The notes below the pieces were generated by a model. That model was not told the DNA's origin and ran no database searches. It saw nothing but the letters and a program-made list of their open reading frames with translations. From positions 289,124 to 353,123 of IMG/VR virus record IMGVR_UViG_3300044640_001495: a stretch of 64,000 bases of DNA; one strand, 5' to 3'. Below are positions 21,125-39,051 of the stretch, one piece after another. The position numbers and the translations under genes were made by a program. The first letter of the stretch is position 1, and the number at the start of each line of letters is the position of its first letter.

Positions 21125-21182
21125 TTAGTGTCCTTTGTGTGTATGTAGTAATTATACGGCAGTTTGGCTAATGTGTCAACCA

Positions 21183-21500
21183 TTATTTGGCAATACGCAC
21201 GATCAAGCCCTGTGGCGTAGCTGCCACATTGTAGCCATTGCTTTCGAATAACTCAACGACCTCTTTAGCCATACGATCTCTAGCTCTAGCACCTTCTGCT
21301 TTGACTGCTATGAACTTCTTGCGATAGTTGATGTAGAGACTTTTGTAGCTGAACGCTGAATCAAGTAGGTCTCTTACTGAGAGAGCCTTGCGGATCTGAT
21401 CTTGTGAATAGGTGCTCTTGTTGTTTGAGTTTTGACGCTGTGCATCCATTGCGGCTGCAAATGCAAACCCGCCTGCGTCTTTAGTATCTAGTTCTTTCAT
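21183..21500 (-). CDS. hypothetical early protein
   Basis: Start moved to MKELD at 21500 after a GGAGCGA RBS. Confidence 0.75.
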   Translation of the reverse strand: MKELDTKDAGGFAFAAAMDAQRQNSNNKSTYSQDQIRKALSVRDLLDSAFSYKSLYINYRKKFIAVKAEGARARDRMAKEVVELFESNGYNVAATPQGLIVRIAK

Positions 21501-21620
21501 TACTCGCTCCTGTTTGTGTGTATGTGTCAATTATACTGCCAAAAAGCCTCGGTGTCAACCTACGAAGTGCCCAGGCGTGTTGCAGGGTCTAGTGGTAGGC
21601 TGACACTTTGGCAACCCCTA

Positions 21621-22169
21621 TTAAGCCGCTTGTCTAGCCATATGGATCATTTCAACGCGGCCCATGTATGCGGTATTTACAACGCAGGGCTGAGTCTTAG
21701 AAGCAATCAGTGTACCTGAATTCTCTGTAAGATGAATCTCTGTTACACGGCAGGTGAAAGGATACAGTTTTTTGGTCTCGCGATAGTCTTCAGCGGCCAT
21801 CTCTTTCTCACGTGGCAAATATTCATACACACGCAGTTTGACCTTGCGCTCTTGTCCGTTAGGAAAGGCACTGGCAAATCCAGGGCCACGAGCACGTCTA
21901 CGCACTGGATCTTTTGCGCCATCATTCTGTTCAAGTACCAAACGATTAAACGCATCGTGATCTGGAATGCCAGCTTCAACCATCGCAGCCTTGTCTTCTA
22001 GCATCTTGATGTAGTTGAGGAATCGTTTGGCTTTGACTTTGCCACCTGCGCCGTTGACATTATAGGTCTTGCCATCAATTAACCATTCAGCCACAAAGGT
22101 CTTATATGGACGGGCATCGCGAAACAGTTCTTTAGCTTTGGCCAATGTCATAATAGGATGTGTTTTCAT
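21621..22169 (-). CDS. hypothetical early protein
   Basis: 182 aa; own promoter. Confidence 0.75.
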   Translation of the reverse strand: MKTHPIMTLAKAKELFRDARPYKTFVAEWLIDGKTYNVNGAGGKVKAKRFLNYIKMLEDKAAMVEAGIPDHDAFNRLVLEQNDGAKDPVRRRARGPGFASAFPNGQERKVKLRVYEYLPREKEMAAEDYRETKKLYPFTCRVTEIHLTENSGTLIASKTQPCVVNTAYMGRVEMIHMARQAA

Positions 22170-22235
22170 CTTGCTCTTTCTGTGTGTTTGTGTATGTGTT
22201 AATTATAACAGGGTTTTGGCACCCTGTCAACCAAA

Positions 22236-22619
22236 TTAGATCCAGCTGTCTACCATCATAACGGGCTTCTTCAAGACCCGTTTAACAAAGTCCTCGGGCT
22301 CGTCGTCAGCACGTACTAACATAAAGCCCATGCTCTCTACCAGGTCTACCTCGCAGATCTGGAGGTCCACACCTGCCTTCTCAAATGCAATGTTCATCTT
22401 GGTCAGGGCATACTTAACGCCTGCTTCAAATGTCTGGTATTCGCCGTCATGGACTTCATCGTAGTCAAACTCTTTAAGCATGACCTCTGCGTACTCTTCA
22501 CCGTCTGCTACGATGAAAGGGCGGATCTTCTTCCAGGCCCGTTGATCGGTACAGTCAAAGTGGTCACAGGCTTCGTTGAGGTCAAACGAGGCAAATGCGT
22601 CATAATTTACTTTAGTCAT
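22236..22619 (-). CDS. acidic hypothetical early protein
   Basis: Start MTKVNY at 22619 after a GGAGCGAA RBS. Confidence 0.75.
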   Translation of the reverse strand: MTKVNYDAFASFDLNEACDHFDCTDQRAWKKIRPFIVADGEEYAEVMLKEFDYDEVHDGEYQTFEAGVKYALTKMNIAFEKAGVDLQICEVDLVESMGFMLVRADDEPEDFVKRVLKKPVMMVDSWI

Positions 22620-22689
22620 TGGGTTCGCTCCTAATGTTTGTTTGTATGTGTCTATTATACAACTAATTTGGCTAGTTGTCAACCTAGTT

Positions 22690-23017
22690 ATGAACAGTTA
22701 GAAAAGAATTAAAGGAACCATTGTCAACTCTCTGTCTCTACCCTAACCAACGTCTAGCTAGGGCCGTGACGGTCATTACTTCCTACAGTGCCCGCCAGCT
22801 TCAGCTTTCGCTTTGCCTTCATATACTTAGATTGAGCGTGAGCGGCCTCACTGTCCTCGCCTTAAGTACCTAACGGTGTAGGTAACCTCTAACTCTTTTC
22901 TAACTGTTCTGCTTAGGCCGAGTCTCTAAACTCGCTTCGTATCCTTTAGTTACAACCCTTTTTGCATTTCTGCTGGGTTCTTACATTTGAGGATCGCCTT
23001 GCTTTTTCTTTCTTCTT
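22690..23017 (-). ncRNA. candidate structured non-coding RNA (about 320 nt), family not recognised
   Basis: Consensus promoter (23024-23052) not followed by an RBS or ORF; 24-bp stem 22886-22909/22692-22715 whose two mismatches are G-U on the minus strand; GNRA-capped hairpins inside. Confidence 0.75.
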
Positions 23018-23071
23018 GTTTCTATTATAACGAACTTCCACCAATCTGTCAACCAAAATGCCGTTGTATTT

Positions 23072-23485
23072 TTACAACTCTATTGCCCTACGGAACACAA
23101 TCTCCTGCTTGGCAAAGGCCTGGATTTCCCAGGGTTGATCAAGGTAAGGATGATTCCTCTTGTACAGCCGGCCCTTCCACATGGTGCCCTTGGCCGTAGG
23201 CTTCAAATGACCCTTGGCAAACTGCGCCACGTGGGTCAACTCGTGTGCCAGTGTGACGCCCAATGTGACCCAGTTGCGATTGGGCTTGAGCACCACAAGG
23301 AATGTGTCTATACCTGTTAGAGGAATGGTTGTGCCCATCTCTTCTAGTTCTGGATCCACCTTGATCACCAACAGTTTGCGGCTACGATTCAAGCCCAATT
23401 GTGTCAGCATGGAGGGCATGACCGATTCAATATAACGGCGGGTCTTGGCGCCAGCTTCAATGTGATATTCCATCATGTTATCCAA
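23072..23485 (-). CDS. zincin-like metallopeptidase
   Basis: TLAHELTHVAQ (HExxH) and QPWEIQA; exact start uncertain (about 23476). Confidence 0.75.
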   Translation of the reverse strand: MDNMMEYHIEAGAKTRRYIESVMPSMLTQLGLNRSRKLLVIKVDPELEEMGTTIPLTGIDTFLVVLKPNRNWVTLGVTLAHELTHVAQFAKGHLKPTAKGTMWKGRLYKRNHPYLDQPWEIQAFAKQEIVFRRAIEL

Positions 23486-23588
23486 AAAGCACAGTGCCTA
23501 CACCTGCGGTCCATAACAGCAGAGCCTGTGCAATGCCAAAGTGGAACAAGAACCATGTAACAGCGATCCAACCTACGAGTTTAACCAT
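23478..23588 (-). CDS. small membrane peptide (36 aa)
   Basis: Manual: MVKLVGWIAVTWFLFHFGIAQALLLWTAGVGTVLFG; AGGAG RBS and promoter. Confidence 0.65.
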   Translation of the reverse strand: MVKLVGWIAVTWFLFHFGIAQALLLWTAGVGTVLFG

Positions 23589-23624
23589 TGCCAGCTCCTT
23601 TGTTGCTATGTGTTAATTATAGTC

Positions 23625-37713: not shown

Positions 37714-37771
37714 CTTTCGCTCCTTTGTGTGTGTATGTGTCTATTATAGCGCCATTAGCCCAATCAGTCAA

Positions 37772-38110
37772 CTAGTCCCCACGAACATCCGTATTCAGTG
37801 TAGGGTTAATAGCACGGCGTAGTTCAACTTCGCGCTTGTGGGCCTGAGCCTTGCCACGAACCACTTCGTGTACGTATACTTCTATCTCGCTCTTGTCGCT
37901 GAGAGTGCGCAGGGCATGACACAAGGCCCAATCCTTAGCTTCTTTCTTAGCACGATAGAAGTGTTTAGCGGCACGTGCCAAAACTGACTTATTAATAGTG
38001 GTCTCAGTCTTGGCTGTGACTCCTATGTAGTTGCCCCCAGCAACACGCAACTCATATATGATATGATTGCGGTCGGTGCGCTTTTTACGAATGGTGTTTG
38101 TCTGTGTCAT
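37772..38110 (-). CDS. GIY-YIG-like nuclease
   Basis: HIIYEL......YIGVT...R...H...AHKRE...PTLN; start MTQTN at 38110. Confidence 0.65.
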   Translation of the reverse strand: MTQTNTIRKKRTDRNHIIYELRVAGGNYIGVTAKTETTINKSVLARAAKHFYRAKKEAKDWALCHALRTLSDKSEIEVYVHEVVRGKAQAHKREVELRRAINPTLNTDVRGD

Positions 38111-38357
38111 GTGTCTATTATACTGCATTTTGGCTGTTTCGTCAACCAAAATAAAAAGACACTAGACTGCGTAGGGTTTCTCGTTCTAGATGATCTCCTT
38201 TAAGGTTACCCACAGGATATTCACAGTGTGATGTGGATATCCAAACTGTAGCCAAAATGCCACACTTTGGGCTGTGTCGCGGCACTCTCATTAGCTGCTG
38301 GCTGCTGCTGTAGGGCTGGTGTACGCTGCGCAGCATTCAGGATTCTGCTGCTGTAGA

Positions 38358-38442
38358 TGGTAGGACCGACCGGAATCGAACCGGTATGCATTGCTGCGAG
38401 AGATTTTAAGTCTCTTGTGTCTACCTATTTCACCACGGTCCT
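38358..38442 (-). tRNA. tRNA-Leu(UAA)
   Basis: AGGACCG/CGGTCCT acceptor stem, AGAGA-CT-TAA-AA-TCTCT anticodon arm, long variable arm, TTCGATT T-loop, encoded CCA. Confidence 0.95.
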
Positions 38443-38468
38443 CAGTCTCGATGCTGCTGCAACGTTGT

Positions 38469-38545
38469 TGGCCAGTCCTACTGGATTCGAACCAGTGGCC
38501 TACAGCTTAGAAGGCTGTTGCTCTATCCAACTGAGCTAAGGACTG
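38469..38545 (-). tRNA. tRNA-Arg(UCU)
   Basis: CAGTCCT/AGGACTG acceptor stem, ACAGC-CT-TCT-AA-GCTGT, TTCGAAT, CCA. Confidence 0.95.
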
Positions 38546-38564
38546 CTGCTGTACTATTAATGTT

Positions 38565-38642
38565 TGGTGGGCCCCCCGTGAGTCGAACACGGCACCAACG
38601 GATTATGAGTCCGCTGCTCTAACCAACATGAGCTAGAGGCCC
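38565..38642 (-). tRNA. tRNA with CAU anticodon, most likely Ile2 (lysidine type)
   Basis: GGGCCTC/GGGGCCC acceptor with C4-G69 and C5-G68, GCGGA-CT-CAT-AA-TCCGT, CCA; elongator Met not excluded. Confidence 0.88.
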
Positions 38643-38649
38643 GATAATC

Positions 38650-38934
38650 TTATGATTCTTTATAGCCCCTTAGGAGTTCTGAATCTTCTGGATCCGCAGC
38701 CAGTGCGCCTGCTGCTACGAAACGGTGCAGATCTTCCATTTTTTCTGCGAATACCTCAGGGCATGATGCTGCTGCTCGCTGCATGTCCCAGTCTGATGGA
38801 TAGTGACGCAGCATGCTTCGGGCCGTGTCTCGGACCAGTTTAGGTACTCTAGGTGTATGTTCTCTATTGCAAAGATCCAATAGGAACCTTCGGGTCTGTA
38901 CTACAGCACGGTATCTTTCATCTGGTAGTGTCAT
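38650..38934 (-). CDS. BPSL0761-like hypothetical protein
   Basis: MTLPDERYRAV...FLLDL....TPRVP..VR..AR..LRHYP. Confidence 0.7.
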   Translation of the reverse strand: MTLPDERYRAVVQTRRFLLDLCNREHTPRVPKLVRDTARSMLRHYPSDWDMQRAAASCPEVFAEKMEDLHRFVAAGALAADPEDSELLRGYKES

Positions 38935-39051
38935 AATAGTTGCGTTTGATAGTTGCACAGGATCTCTGCTTCTAGATAGCAGTCTTTTCTTCAGCATGTA
39001 TATATTATATGATCGTTACACGTTCTTGTCAACCTGAAATGGCTCATTGAG

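What the first reader, a model, noticed from the sequence alone, without database searches (positions are those of the whole stretch)
21131..39032. 18-kb array of about 27 near-consensus promoter cassettes, each driving one to a few small genes
Seen: co-oriented units of GGTTGACA-N17-TATAAT, an ACAC-rich leader and an RBS recur about every 0.3-1.5 kb. The genes are mostly short, unknown and visibly more GC-rich than the replication genes. Established: T4-type phages carry repeated early-promoter cassettes (PeSL elements) that mediate modular gene shuffling. Inference: a host-takeover and anti-defence gene library that is reshuffled through the repeated promoters and may also titrate host RNA polymerase.
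Basis: partly seen in the sequence, partly recalled or inferred. Interest (0 to 1): 0.6.

Follow-up and report, generated by a model that had tools for sequence, protein, structure and literature searches.

The report
Promoter-cassette gene array, lake jumbo phage
An 18-kb stretch of a 353-kb lake-water phage genome carries 27 near-perfect host-type promoters, each in front of one to four small, mostly unknown genes; related phages have reshuffled these units, partly by recombination inside the repeated promoter sequences, as already described for T4-like phages.

Summary
There are 27 co-oriented cassettes on the minus strand (window 21151-39032). Twenty match TTGACA-N17-TATAAT exactly, against 0.06 expected by chance. 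Each has a CA-rich leader and a strong ribosome-binding site. Together they drive 45 small ORFs (median 96 aa), three tRNAs and one non-coding RNA.

The genome is a 98%-complete uncultivated jumbo phage from lake water. It has a T4-type Gp23 capsid protein and a UvsX/RecA-like recombinase.

About 70 related metagenomic contigs carry the same kind of array. A block of seven to nine genes keeps its order in all of them, and the rest is heavily reshuffled.

Among 31 indels or replacements between near-identical relatives, 5 have both ends inside cassettes (0.46 expected) and 15 have at least one end there (6.8 expected). Three crossovers resolve to 30, 13 and 9 identical bases within the cassette.

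Shuffling is not confined to promoters. Genes that never follow a promoter change neighbours almost as often, at exact stop/start overlaps.

Terminator stem-loops accompany only a minority of cassettes. No known defence or anti-defence family was found, and RNA polymerase titration is untested.

Verdict: a new variant of the known PeSL-type hyperplastic early region.

Side findings: a new, covariation-supported ~225-nt structured RNA, and leaderless genes.

The parts
39004..39032 (-). Cassette 1: promoter, 12 of 12 consensus
   Evidence: matrix 33.0 bits. ATG lies 7 nt after the -10 element. Followed by ORF 38650-38997 and three tRNAs.
38117..38145 (-). Cassette 2: promoter, 11 of 12 (TTGACG)
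   Evidence: ATG exactly 7 nt after the -10 element, so the GIY-YIG-like gene is leaderless.
37743..37771 (-). Cassette 3: promoter, 11 of 12
   Evidence: Drives four ORFs (37713-36658).
36633..36661 (-). Cassette 4: promoter, 11 of 12
   Evidence: Upstream hairpin at 36675-36696.
36082..36110 (-). Cassette 5: promoter, 11 of 12
   Evidence: Drives the AAA ATPase operon. A 7-bp stem encloses the -35 element (read).
34093..34121 (-). Cassette 6: promoter, 12 of 12
   Evidence: Terminator-like hairpin at 34147-34174 just upstream.
33527..33555 (-). Cassette 7: promoter, 12 of 12, inside the 3' part of ORF 33428-34063
33403..33431 (-). Cassette 8: promoter, 11 of 12 (TATACT), 124 bp after cassette 7
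   Evidence: Drives the MoxR-type ATPase gene.
32182..32210 (-). Cassette 9: promoter, 12 of 12
   Evidence: Strong hairpin at 32221-32251 plus a T-run upstream.
30836..30864 (-). Cassette 10: promoter, 11 of 12
   Evidence: Hairpin at 30904-30931, z = -4.8. Drives four small ORFs.
29973..30001 (-). Cassette 11: promoter, 12 of 12
   Evidence: Metagenome contig joints fall in its spacer.
29599..29627 (-). Cassette 12: promoter, 12 of 12
28977..29005 (-). Cassette 13: promoter, 12 of 12, highest matrix score (54 bits)
   Evidence: Several contig joints fall in its spacer or leader.
27648..27676 (-). Cassette 14: promoter, 10 of 12 (TTGACC / TATACT)
   Evidence: matrix 31.3 bits. Back-joint 27660 to 27203 seen in three runs.
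27186..27214 (-). Cassette 15: promoter, 12 of 12
   Evidence: 13-bp hairpin plus T8 at 27224-27254.
26852..26880 (-). Cassette 16: promoter, 12 of 12
   Evidence: Spacer nearly identical to those of cassettes 17 and 18.
26621..26649 (-). Cassette 17: promoter, 12 of 12
   Evidence: In all four runs a variant replaces 26212-26610.
26168..26196 (-). Cassette 18: promoter, 12 of 12
   Evidence: An 8-bp inverted repeat encloses the -35 element (read).
25921..25949 (-). Cassette 19: promoter, 12 of 12
   Evidence: Hairpin at 25965-25978 upstream.
24842..24870 (-). Cassette 20: promoter, 12 of 12, with a leaderless start
   Evidence: ATG at 24835, 7 nt after the -10 element.
24580..24608 (-). Cassette 21: promoter, 12 of 12
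   Evidence: Drives three ORFs, including the SWIM-finger protein.
23616..23644 (-). Cassette 22: promoter, 12 of 12
23024..23052 (-). Cassette 23: promoter, 12 of 12, drives non-coding RNA
22654..22682 (-). Cassette 24: promoter, 12 of 12
22202..22230 (-). Cassette 25: promoter, 12 of 12
21530..21558 (-). Cassette 26: promoter, 12 of 12
21151..21179 (-). Cassette 27: promoter, 12 of 12, last of the array
38358..38642 (-). tRNA-Met, tRNA-Arg(tct) and tRNA-Leu(taa), between cassettes 1 and 2
   Evidence: ARAGORN; Rfam tRNA, 55-71 bits.
37772..38110 (-). Leaderless gene for a 112-aa GIY-YIG-like protein, conserved in 32 of 36 arrays
   Evidence: Motifs IIY..YIGVT..R..H..Y..E..N are invariant. 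AlphaFold pLDDT 87. Best fold matches are the I-TevI and UvrC GIY-YIG domains: probability 0.96-0.99, TM 0.55-0.68, but E = 0.08. No Pfam or PDB sequence hit.
34995..36050 (-). AAA-type ATPase, 351 aa, first gene of the conserved four-gene operon
   Evidence: Pfam AAA_16, E = 3e-7. Present in 35 of 36 arrays.
34221..34493 (-). Winged-helix protein, 90 aa
   Evidence: Pfam HTH_39, E = 5.9e-8, above cut-off.
32269..33354 (-). MoxR-type AAA+ ATPase, 361 aa
   Evidence: Pfam AAA_5 and AAA_3. In 36 of 36 arrays.
30942..32156 (-). DUF2201 putative metallopeptidase with VWA-like domain, 404 aa; used as anchor for relatives
   Evidence: Pfam, E = 3e-41 and 5e-17. 40-43% identical homologues in PA5oct, Atu_ph07 and Phosso.
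27864..28478 (-). Acidic 204-aa protein (pI 4.2); DUF1281_C-like by language-model features only
   Evidence: No Pfam hit. Atlas score 0.95 to clusters in which 22-38% of members carry PF18406. More than 490 relatives in metagenome contigs.
24605..24835 (-). Leaderless gene for a 76-aa membrane protein
   Evidence: ATG 7 nt after the -10 element, with no ribosome-binding site. The same architecture is found in many relatives. Weak DUF6552 match.
23874..24194 (-). SWIM zinc-finger protein, 106 aa; never follows a promoter, yet has 8 different upstream neighbours
   Evidence: Pfam SWIM, E = 1.7e-6.
22684..22909 (-). Structured non-coding RNA, about 225 nt (part B of the cassette-23 transcript)
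   Evidence: No ORF; fold z = -5.9. Covariance model score 216.9 bits. In 62 distinct relatives 95% of cells are paired against 74.7% when shuffled, and 42 of 55 pairs show changes on both sides. No Rfam match.
22910..23017 (-). Conserved non-coding 5' segment (part A) between cassette 23 and the structured RNA
   Evidence: 84-88% identical in L123, L132, L134, L093 and L095. Absent where the RNA sits directly behind a cassette.

Best explanation
The region is the main hyperplastic early region of an uncultivated freshwater jumbo phage of the wider T4 superfamily.

Expression (inferred from sequence). On infection the host's sigma-70-type RNA polymerase should recognise 27 near-consensus promoters that all point the same way. 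Each transcript should start about 7 nt after the -10 element. It carries a CA-rich leader and a strong ribosome-binding site (AAGGAGCGA), or, in about 5% of cassettes in the clade, starts directly with the ATG. Every one-to-four-gene unit has its own promoter and translation signals, so a unit stays expressed wherever it lands. Only a quarter to a third of cassettes follow a terminator hairpin, so much read-through is expected.

Recombination (shown by comparison). The short conserved pieces of the cassette serve as crossover points for deletion, insertion and relocation of units. These pieces are the -35 element with the start of the spacer, and the leader with the ribosome-binding site. That the phage's own UvsX/RecA-type recombination system does this is inferred.

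Second route (shown, mechanism unknown). Single genes are also exchanged at exact stop/start overlaps inside operons, without a promoter.

Cargo. It is a large, mostly unknown pool of small early proteins: 249 families in 36 arrays, 138 of them seen once. There is also a conserved block (GIY-YIG-like nuclease, AAA ATPase operon, MoxR-VWA pair), three tRNAs and a structured RNA. Host takeover is the likely role of the cargo, but this is an inference.
For: Promoters:
- 20 exact and 7 near-exact sites against 0.06 expected.
- Strict strand bias across 36 non-redundant related arrays: 719 sites on the array strand, 8 on the other.
- No site of 10 bits or more across genome positions 138,659-298,671, which include the Gp23 capsid gene.

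Relatives:
- About 70 IMG/VR contigs, with the anchor protein 74-100% identical, carry arrays at about one cassette per 0.6-1 kb.
- Gene order is conserved for families 2-6-3-5, 4, 0, 1 and scrambled elsewhere.

Recombination at cassettes:
- L037 against L036 (99.9% identical): a 247-bp single-gene unit is flanked by a 30-bp perfect repeat covering the -35 element and the start of the spacer.
- L059 against L066: a 978-bp, three-cassette indel with its crossover in 13 bp of leader plus ribosome-binding site.
- L029 against L028: a 385-bp unit with its crossover in the 9-bp AAGGAGCGA.
- Of 31 events, 5 have both ends in cassettes (null 0.46, none of 2000 permutations as high) and 15 have at least one end there (null 6.8, P = 0.0015).
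- Sequence linkage switches from the upstream gene to the downstream gene within the spacer.
- Lake metagenome contigs break at cassettes. Three chimeric joints inside spacers keep the 17-nt spacing.

Recombination genes: a RecA/UvsX-like protein and a UvsW-like helicase are encoded.

Literature: the PeSL concept and mini-circles (PMC2839356, PMC4122927).
Against: - There are no transcription data. Early timing and start sites are inferred from sequence alone.
- Breakpoints are not confined to cassettes. Upstream-neighbour diversity is 0.64 for genes never behind a promoter against 0.80 for unit heads (p = 0.06). Adjacency is conserved in 65% of cases across promoters against 76% without them. 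16 of 31 recent events have no end in a cassette.
- Any viable breakpoint must be intergenic, and nearly all intergenic space here is cassette. Part of the enrichment is therefore selective filtering, not mechanism.
- Cassette similarity is mostly limited to functionally constrained positions, so shared descent or mobility of the cassettes themselves is not shown.
- The joints come from assembled contigs of co-occurring strains. They are not proof of circles or of ongoing rearrangement.
Confidence: 0.7

Rival explanations
1. The cassettes are only strong expression signals shaped by convergent selection. Shuffling comes from generic illegitimate or microhomology recombination and gene loss anywhere, and selection keeps only events that end between genes. 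The promoters mark permissive sites but are not the recombination substrate.
For: - Promoter-less junctions are shuffled nearly as much, at exact TAATG or ATGA overlaps.
- 16 of 31 recent events do not touch a cassette.
- The conserved block keeps its synteny despite five to six cassettes.
- Two of the three resolved crossovers use only 9-13 bp.
- Outside the hexamers the cassette consensus is weak.
Against: - Events with both ends in cassettes are about ten times over-represented.
- The 30-bp perfect repeat flanking the L037 unit goes beyond what promoter function needs.
- Neighbouring cassettes 16-18 share nearly identical spacers.
- Chimeric spacers keep exactly 17 nt.
Confidence: 0.25
2. 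The main role of the array is to act as a sink that titrates host RNA polymerase away from host genes. The downstream ORFs would be of secondary importance.
For: 27 consensus-strength promoters lie in 18 kb of a genome that will be replicated. PeSL promoters were too strong to clone unmutated (PMC2839356).
Against: - No test was possible.
- The ORFs have strong ribosome-binding sites.
- Ten families are conserved in 30 or more of 36 arrays.
- Coding density is high, which argues that the products matter.
- Other jumbo relatives with the same conserved genes lack the consensus array (L073-L080).
Confidence: 0.05
3. The array is an artefact: a chimeric metagenome assembly, or a tandem amplification of one promoter-gene unit.
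For: Metagenome assemblies break at the cassettes.
Against: - Three independent IMG/VR contigs are 100% identical over 17-21 kb.
- At least 24 runs hold 90% or more of the sampled words of a 6-kb stretch of the array (window 24100-30050).
- No gene family is repeated within the array.
- The flanking genes are conserved among relatives.
Confidence: 0.01

Closest known systems
PeSL (promoter-early stem-loop) cassettes of T4-like phages: RB49/phi1, T4/PST, KVP40/nt-1 (Arbiol 2010, PMC2839356; Comeau 2014, PMC4122927)
   Same: - Near-consensus sigma-70 promoter with a 17-nt spacer, ending in a ribosome-binding site and start codon.
- Clustered in a hyperplastic region in front of small orphan genes.
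- Indels between close relatives flanked by two cassettes.
- The phage has T4-type capsid and recombination genes.
   Different: - The host phage is a 353-kb freshwater jumbo phage, only distantly related (replication proteins at most 51% identical to PA5oct or Atu_ph07).
- The density is high: 27 cassettes in 18 kb.
- The stem-loop is present in only about a quarter to a third of cassettes.
- Extra conserved positions: GG before the -35 element, TTGG in the spacer, and a CA-rich leader.
- A leaderless subclass exists.
- Crossovers also occur in the ribosome-binding site.
- Much shuffling occurs without any cassette.
- Mini-circles have not been shown.
Clusters of strong early promoters in T4 and T5 (own knowledge; T4 review PMC2988021 was listed but not read)
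   Same: Host-polymerase promoters stronger than host ones drive many small early genes of unknown function.
   Different: Here the match to the plain consensus is nearly perfect, the units are much denser, and population-level shuffling is documented.
Morons of lambdoid phages: promoter-gene-terminator units inserted between genes (own knowledge)
   Same: Self-sufficient expression units that can be present or absent between conserved neighbours.
   Different: Morons are isolated and expressed from the prophage. Here the units form a co-oriented early array in a lytic-type jumbo phage and share a common cassette sequence.
Integron gene-cassette arrays (own knowledge)
   Same: A variable array of small, mostly unknown genes exchanged as units, possibly through circular intermediates.
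   Different: No integrase or attC sites. Each unit has its own promoter. Exchange is by short homology, not site-specific recombination.

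Membership tests
PeSL regulatory cassette | Strong sigma-70-like early promoter (-35, 17-nt spacer, -10) | tested here: met
   20 exact, 6 one-mismatch and 1 two-mismatch sites, all with a 17-nt spacer. Activity was not measured.
PeSL regulatory cassette | Stem-loop (terminator or attenuator) as part of the cassette | tested here: inconclusive
   Window: 4 of 27 have a strong upstream hairpin (z of -3 or below) and 6 of 27 reach z of -2 or below. Clade: 34% of 598 cassettes have an upstream fold of -15 kcal/mol or lower, against 20% when shuffled and 2% in coding sequence. 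TTTT lies upstream in 24% against 4%. A stem of 6 bp or more enclosing the -35 element occurs in 9.2% against 5.0%. The stem-loop is present in a minority and is not a constant component.
PeSL regulatory cassette | AT-rich tract upstream of the -35 element | tested here: inconclusive
   The consensus a.atattGG before TTGACA carries low information.
PeSL regulatory cassette | Ribosome-binding site and start codon at the 3' end | tested here: met
   AAGGAGCGA followed by ATG 26-35 nt after the -10 element in most cassettes.
PeSL regulatory cassette | Concentrated in hyperplastic regions in front of orphan genes | tested here: met
   27 of the genome's 63 matrix hits lie in 18 kb. 138 of 249 array families are seen in one locus only. 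Few Pfam hits.
PeSL regulatory cassette | Indels and replacements between close relatives bounded by cassettes | tested here: met
   5 of 31 events have both ends in cassettes (null 0.46) and 15 of 31 have one end (null 6.8). Crossovers resolved. However, half of the events, and many old rearrangements, do not involve cassettes.
PeSL regulatory cassette | Formation of encapsidated mini-circles by exchange between neighbouring cassettes | not testable with these tools
   Only assembled contigs were available. Back-joints between cassettes (27660 to 27203 in three runs; 29981 to 28994) fit circles, duplications or other strains equally well.
PeSL regulatory cassette | Carried by a T4-like myovirus | tested here: inconclusive
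   Gp23 capsid protein, E = 2.6e-96, and a RecA/UvsX-like protein are present. But the nearest cultured relatives are jumbo phages at 51% identity or less, and the T4 late-promoter motif is not enriched.
GIY-YIG nuclease (for ORF 37772-38110) | GIY...YIG strands, conserved Arg, His/Tyr, Glu and Asn, and the alpha/beta fold | tested here: inconclusive
   The motifs are invariant in 17 relatives. The confident model's top fold hits are GIY-YIG domains, but at E = 0.08. Pfam and PDB sequence searches are negative.
Any Rfam family (for the RNA at 22684-22909) | Match to a curated covariance model | tested here: not met
   Nothing at E of 0.1 or below except the three tRNAs. No TROVE/Ro protein in the genome, so a Y-RNA system is unlikely.

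The most novel reading that the evidence does not exclude
The array is an integrase-free gene-cassette exchange platform working at population scale in lakes. Self-expressing units, including a previously undescribed ~225-nt structured RNA, would circulate among co-infecting jumbo phages. Exchange would be by short-homology recombination at promoter and ribosome-binding-site sequences, possibly through mini-circles. A second, promoter-independent mechanism would swap single genes exactly at translationally coupled stop/start overlaps.
Probability: 0.3. Interest if true: 0.7.

Novelty: new variant of a known kind. Interest (0 to 1): 0.5.

Why it matters
PeSL-mediated shuffling has so far rested on a few pairs of cultured T4-like phages. 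Here the same architecture appears in an abundant uncultivated clade of freshwater jumbo phages, with hundreds of natural variants already in public metagenomes. That makes it possible to measure how much of phage accessory-gene turnover really runs through repeated promoters. On the present data the answer is some, but not most.

The array also offers three further things:
- a compact catalogue of about 250 families of candidate early or host-takeover proteins;
- a set of natural consensus promoters with leaders, including leaderless ones;
- a new structured RNA family expressed from such a promoter.

It also explains why metagenome assemblies of these phages break up in this region.

Tried and rejected
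- Near-identity DNA search of the array against GenBank phages found only the tRNAs.
- The histogram of alignment ends for all 36 by 36 locus pairs was dominated by divergence at gene ends. It supported only an excess of alignment starts at cassettes (36% against 15%). I moved to close pairs.
- PADLOC gave two weak hits (E = 5e-4 and 9e-3), which I do not treat as defence genes.
- PHROG hits are almost all 'unknown function'.
- The T4 late-promoter motif TATAAATA is depleted, not enriched.
- A Y-RNA/Ro reading of the non-coding RNA was rejected: no TROVE protein, and the weak YrlA hit lies on the tRNAs.
- A PDB sequence search with the GIY-YIG-like profile found nothing relevant.
- The ATG 7 nt after the -10 element of cassette 1 (ORF 38650-38997) is doubtful. 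In relatives the same stretch contains an in-frame ribosome-binding site and the conserved start MTLPDERY.
- Tandem-duplication origin was rejected: no family is repeated within the array.
- The large protein searches were not needed and were not used.

Full report
**What is there.** The pattern TTGACA-N16-18-TATAAT occurs 22 times in the window. Twenty of these lie on the minus strand between 21151 and 39032, all with a 17-nt spacer. Shuffled sequence gives 0.06 matches. The whole genome (353,123 bp, 41% GC) has 36 exact sites. Allowing one or two mismatches adds seven sites in the same stretch and on the same strand, giving 27.

The flanks are conserved too:
- GG precedes the -35 element in 21 of 27.
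- A CA-rich stretch of about 20 nt follows the -10 element.
- Then come AAGGAGCGA and an ATG.

A weight matrix built from 598 distinct cassettes of relatives scores all 27 at 25-54 bits. It finds 36 further, mostly weaker sites elsewhere in the genome. None of 10 bits or more lies between genome positions 138,659 and 298,671, which include the capsid gene.

The array holds 45 ORFs (median 96 aa; many acidic or membrane proteins), three tRNAs and one non-coding unit. Its GC content is 47.5%, against 39.2% for the replication genes.

**What genome this is.** The window is the last 64 kb of an IMG/VR virus record rated 98% complete. It encodes:
- a T4-type Gp23 capsid protein (E = 2.6e-96);
- a RecA/UvsX-like protein;
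- a DnaB-type helicase, a primase, a UvsW-like helicase and a DNA ligase.

The nearest cultured relatives are the jumbo phages PA5oct, Atu_ph07, Phosso and Rak2-like phages, at 51% protein identity or less. A 6-kb stretch of the array is found nearly intact in at least 24 lake-water metagenome runs.

**The array in relatives.** A search of IMG/VR with the DUF2201 protein returned 80 loci. The 72 loci whose anchor protein is 74-100% identical all carry co-oriented cassettes at about one per 0.6-1 kb. The eight at about 54% identity do not. In 36 non-redundant loci the matrix finds 719 cassettes on the array strand and 8 on the other.

I clustered the ORFs into families and wrote out gene order with promoter positions. 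Two things stand out:
- A block is conserved in content and order. It comprises families 14, 7 and 9, the AAA operon 2-6-3-5, then 4, 0 and 1, corresponding to window 38997 down to 30942.
- Downstream of it the same families turn up in different places and combinations.

The 36 arrays hold 1,195 genes in 249 families. Of these families 138 are seen once and 10 are in 30 or more loci. Just over half of the units (55%) have a single gene.

**Do breakpoints coincide with cassettes? Recent events.** I compared all loci that share alignments of 90% identity or more and catalogued 31 distinct indels or replacements.
- Five have both ends within -15 to +75 of a cassette. The permutation mean is 0.46, and none of 2000 permutations reached 5.
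- Fifteen have at least one end there (mean 6.8, P = 0.0015).
- Sixteen have none.

The clean cases are instructive:
- L037 differs from the 99.9%-identical L036 by one 247-bp unit encoding a 57-aa ORF. The unit is flanked by a perfect 30-bp repeat that covers the -35 element and the first 14 nt of the spacer. More distant relatives have the unit at the same place, so L036 most likely lost it.
- In L059 against L066 a 978-bp segment with three cassettes is present or absent. The crossover lies in 13 identical bases of CA-leader plus ribosome-binding site.
- In L029 against L028 the crossover lies in the 9-bp AAGGAGCGA.
- In L059 against L066 a unit has also changed position, with its ends at +63 and +41 of cassettes.

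Across all cassettes, similarity upstream and in the first half of the spacer follows the upstream gene. Similarity in the leader follows the downstream gene. This places typical exchange points within the promoter core.

In four lake metagenomes the assembled contigs break at cassettes. Three low-depth joints link two cassettes inside their spacers while keeping exactly 17 nt: 27660 to 27203 (seen in three runs), 29981 to 28994, and 26176 to 28992. These are contigs from mixed strains. They show natural recombinant cassettes, not circles.

**Do breakpoints coincide with cassettes? Older events.** Here the picture is much less tidy.
- Adjacency of two families is conserved between loci in 76% of cases without a promoter between them and in 65% with one.
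- Families that never follow a promoter (15, 20, 24, 26, 13, 22) have upstream-neighbour diversity of 0.75-0.95. The class means are 0.64 against 0.80 for unit heads (p = 0.06; Spearman 0.25, p = 0.08).
- At these promoter-less junctions the genes meet at exact TAATG or ATGA overlaps, whatever the partner.
- The conserved block keeps its order although it contains five or six cassettes.

So cassettes are demonstrable crossover sites. They are neither necessary nor sufficient for shuffling.

**Stem-loops.** PeSLs are defined as promoter plus stem-loop. Here strong upstream hairpins, some with T-runs, precede cassettes 6, 9, 10 and 15. Weaker ones precede a few more. Across the clade about a third of cassettes have a stable upstream fold (34% against 20% when shuffled). 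A stem enclosing the -35 element is only mildly enriched (9.2% against 5.0%). The terminator part is therefore optional.

**Cargo.**
- Pfam gives credible matches for only a handful of ORFs: two AAA ATPases, the MoxR/DUF2201-VWA pair, a winged-helix protein, a SWIM finger and a weak MscS-like beta domain.
- PADLOC gives nothing convincing.
- PHROG matches are nearly all of unknown function.
- The conserved second gene (37772-38110) has invariant GIY-YIG-like motifs and a confident model whose best fold matches are GIY-YIG domains, but at weak E-values. An early nuclease in the manner of T4 endonuclease II is possible; the comparison with T4 is my own knowledge, and the function is an inference.
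- The acidic 204-aa protein resembles DUF1281_C clusters by language-model features only.

'Host takeover' is thus plausible, and 'anti-defence' has no direct support.

**Side findings: leaderless starts.** An ATG sits exactly 7 nt after the -10 element in 167 of 1,347 distinct cassettes, against 1-15 at neighbouring offsets. I then excluded cases with a short ORF or with an in-frame start led by a ribosome-binding site. That leaves 67 cassettes (5%), from 49 distinct N-terminal peptides, that look leaderless. Two are in the window, at 38110 and 24835.

**Side findings: a structured RNA.** Cassette 23 is followed by 335 nt with no ORF.
- Its 3' 225 nt fold into a structure closed by a 21-bp helix.
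- A covariance model finds it in three loci outside the seed alignment (47-53 bits, E of 3e-15 or better) among the loci already fetched, and in 76 of 80 further IMG/VR loci fetched with a 19-nt motif.
- Across 62 distinct sequences 95% of cells are paired, against 74.7% when shuffled.
- 42 of 55 pairs show changes on both sides.
- The covariation score is 0.41, against 0.15 when shuffled and 0.08 or less for slid controls.
- In 56 of 64 distinct copies it lies within 180 nt downstream of a consensus cassette.
- Rfam has no match.

**Comparison with what is known.** The closest described system is the PeSL of T4-like phages (PMC2839356, PMC4122927). The following are shared: the promoter, the ribosome-binding site, the location in a hyperplastic region, and cassette-flanked indels. 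The following differ: the constant stem-loop is missing, the phage is a distant jumbo relative, crossovers also use the ribosome-binding site, and a large share of shuffling bypasses the cassettes. Mini-circles could not be tested.

I therefore class the array as a new variant of a known kind. It works like a PeSL region, but strict membership is not established.

**Limits.**
- There is no expression data, no host and no raw reads.
- Gene calls and families are my own heuristics.
- Comparisons between loci are not phylogenetically independent.
- The enrichment at cassettes is partly what selection for intergenic breakpoints would give.

Noticed in passing
window 22684-22909 (-); also L005:18712-18936, L041:16760-16979, L122:7125-7328 and about 76 further IMG/VR loci: A previously undescribed structured RNA of about 190-245 nt, closed by a 21-bp helix. 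It sits directly, or about 110 nt, behind a consensus early promoter. Covariation support is strong (42 of 55 pairs with changes on both sides in 62 distinct sequences). There is no Rfam match. Its function is unknown.
   Followed up: yes
window 22910-23017 (-): A conserved non-coding segment of about 110 nt (part A) lies between cassette 23 and the structured RNA. It contains a small hairpin. It is present in some relatives and absent where the RNA has its own promoter, so it may be a second small RNA or a leader.
   Followed up: partly
window 38110 and 24835 (-); 67 of 1,347 cassettes in relatives: Leaderless genes: the ATG lies exactly at the predicted transcript start, 7 nt after the -10 element. 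There is no ribosome-binding site, and CA-rich codons follow. Within one gene family (the GIY-YIG-like protein) relatives switch between leaderless starts and starts led by a ribosome-binding site.
   Followed up: yes
relatives, e.g. families 15, 20, 24, 26, 13 (window 23874-24194, 30502-30681, 29998-30234, 23625-23855): Single genes inside operons have many different upstream partners. They are always joined at an exact TAATG or ATGA stop/start overlap with no promoter. This implies a gene-precise exchange or deletion process that the cassette model does not explain.
   Followed up: partly
window 24100-30050; loci L081-L160: Public metagenome assemblies of this phage clade fragment at the cassettes. 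Logan contigs end at 24833-24861, 26130-26196, 26611-26640 and other cassette positions, and most JGI contigs with the 204-aa gene are 1-6 kb. This points to strain-level variation at these points.
   Followed up: partly
cassettes clade-wide: Conserved positions go beyond what sigma-70 recognition needs: GG just before the -35 element, TTGG at spacer positions 3-6, and a G/T pattern before the -10 element. These may reflect an extended -10 element or a site for a phage regulator.
   Followed up: no
window 33403-33555 (-): Two consensus promoters lie 124 bp apart. The first is inside the 3' end of the upstream 211-aa gene, and both are in front of the MoxR-type ATPase gene. This tandem pair recurs in several relatives (shown as '> )').
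   Followed up: no
whole genome, 10-kb bins: The array is the most GC-rich part of the genome (47% against 41% overall, with bins as low as 33%). Arrays of relatives are 44-51% GC. The cause is unknown; it could be acquisition, expression level or host mimicry.
   Followed up: no
genome 22,973-138,659 (+) and window 45498-50864 (-): About 30 further cassette-like promoters are spaced 1-10 kb apart on two diverging arms around the array. None of 10 bits or more lies in the 160 kb between genome positions 138,659 and 298,671, which include the capsid gene. The T4 late motif TATAAATA is depleted genome-wide.
   Followed up: partly
window 10711-11652 (+), 50873-51937 (-), 56224-57456 (-), 57594-63998 (+): Outside the array the window encodes a carbamoyltransferase-like protein, an FkbM-type methyltransferase, a class I/II aminotransferase and an ORF of more than 2,100 aa that runs off the end. 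These may relate to DNA or surface modification.
   Followed up: no
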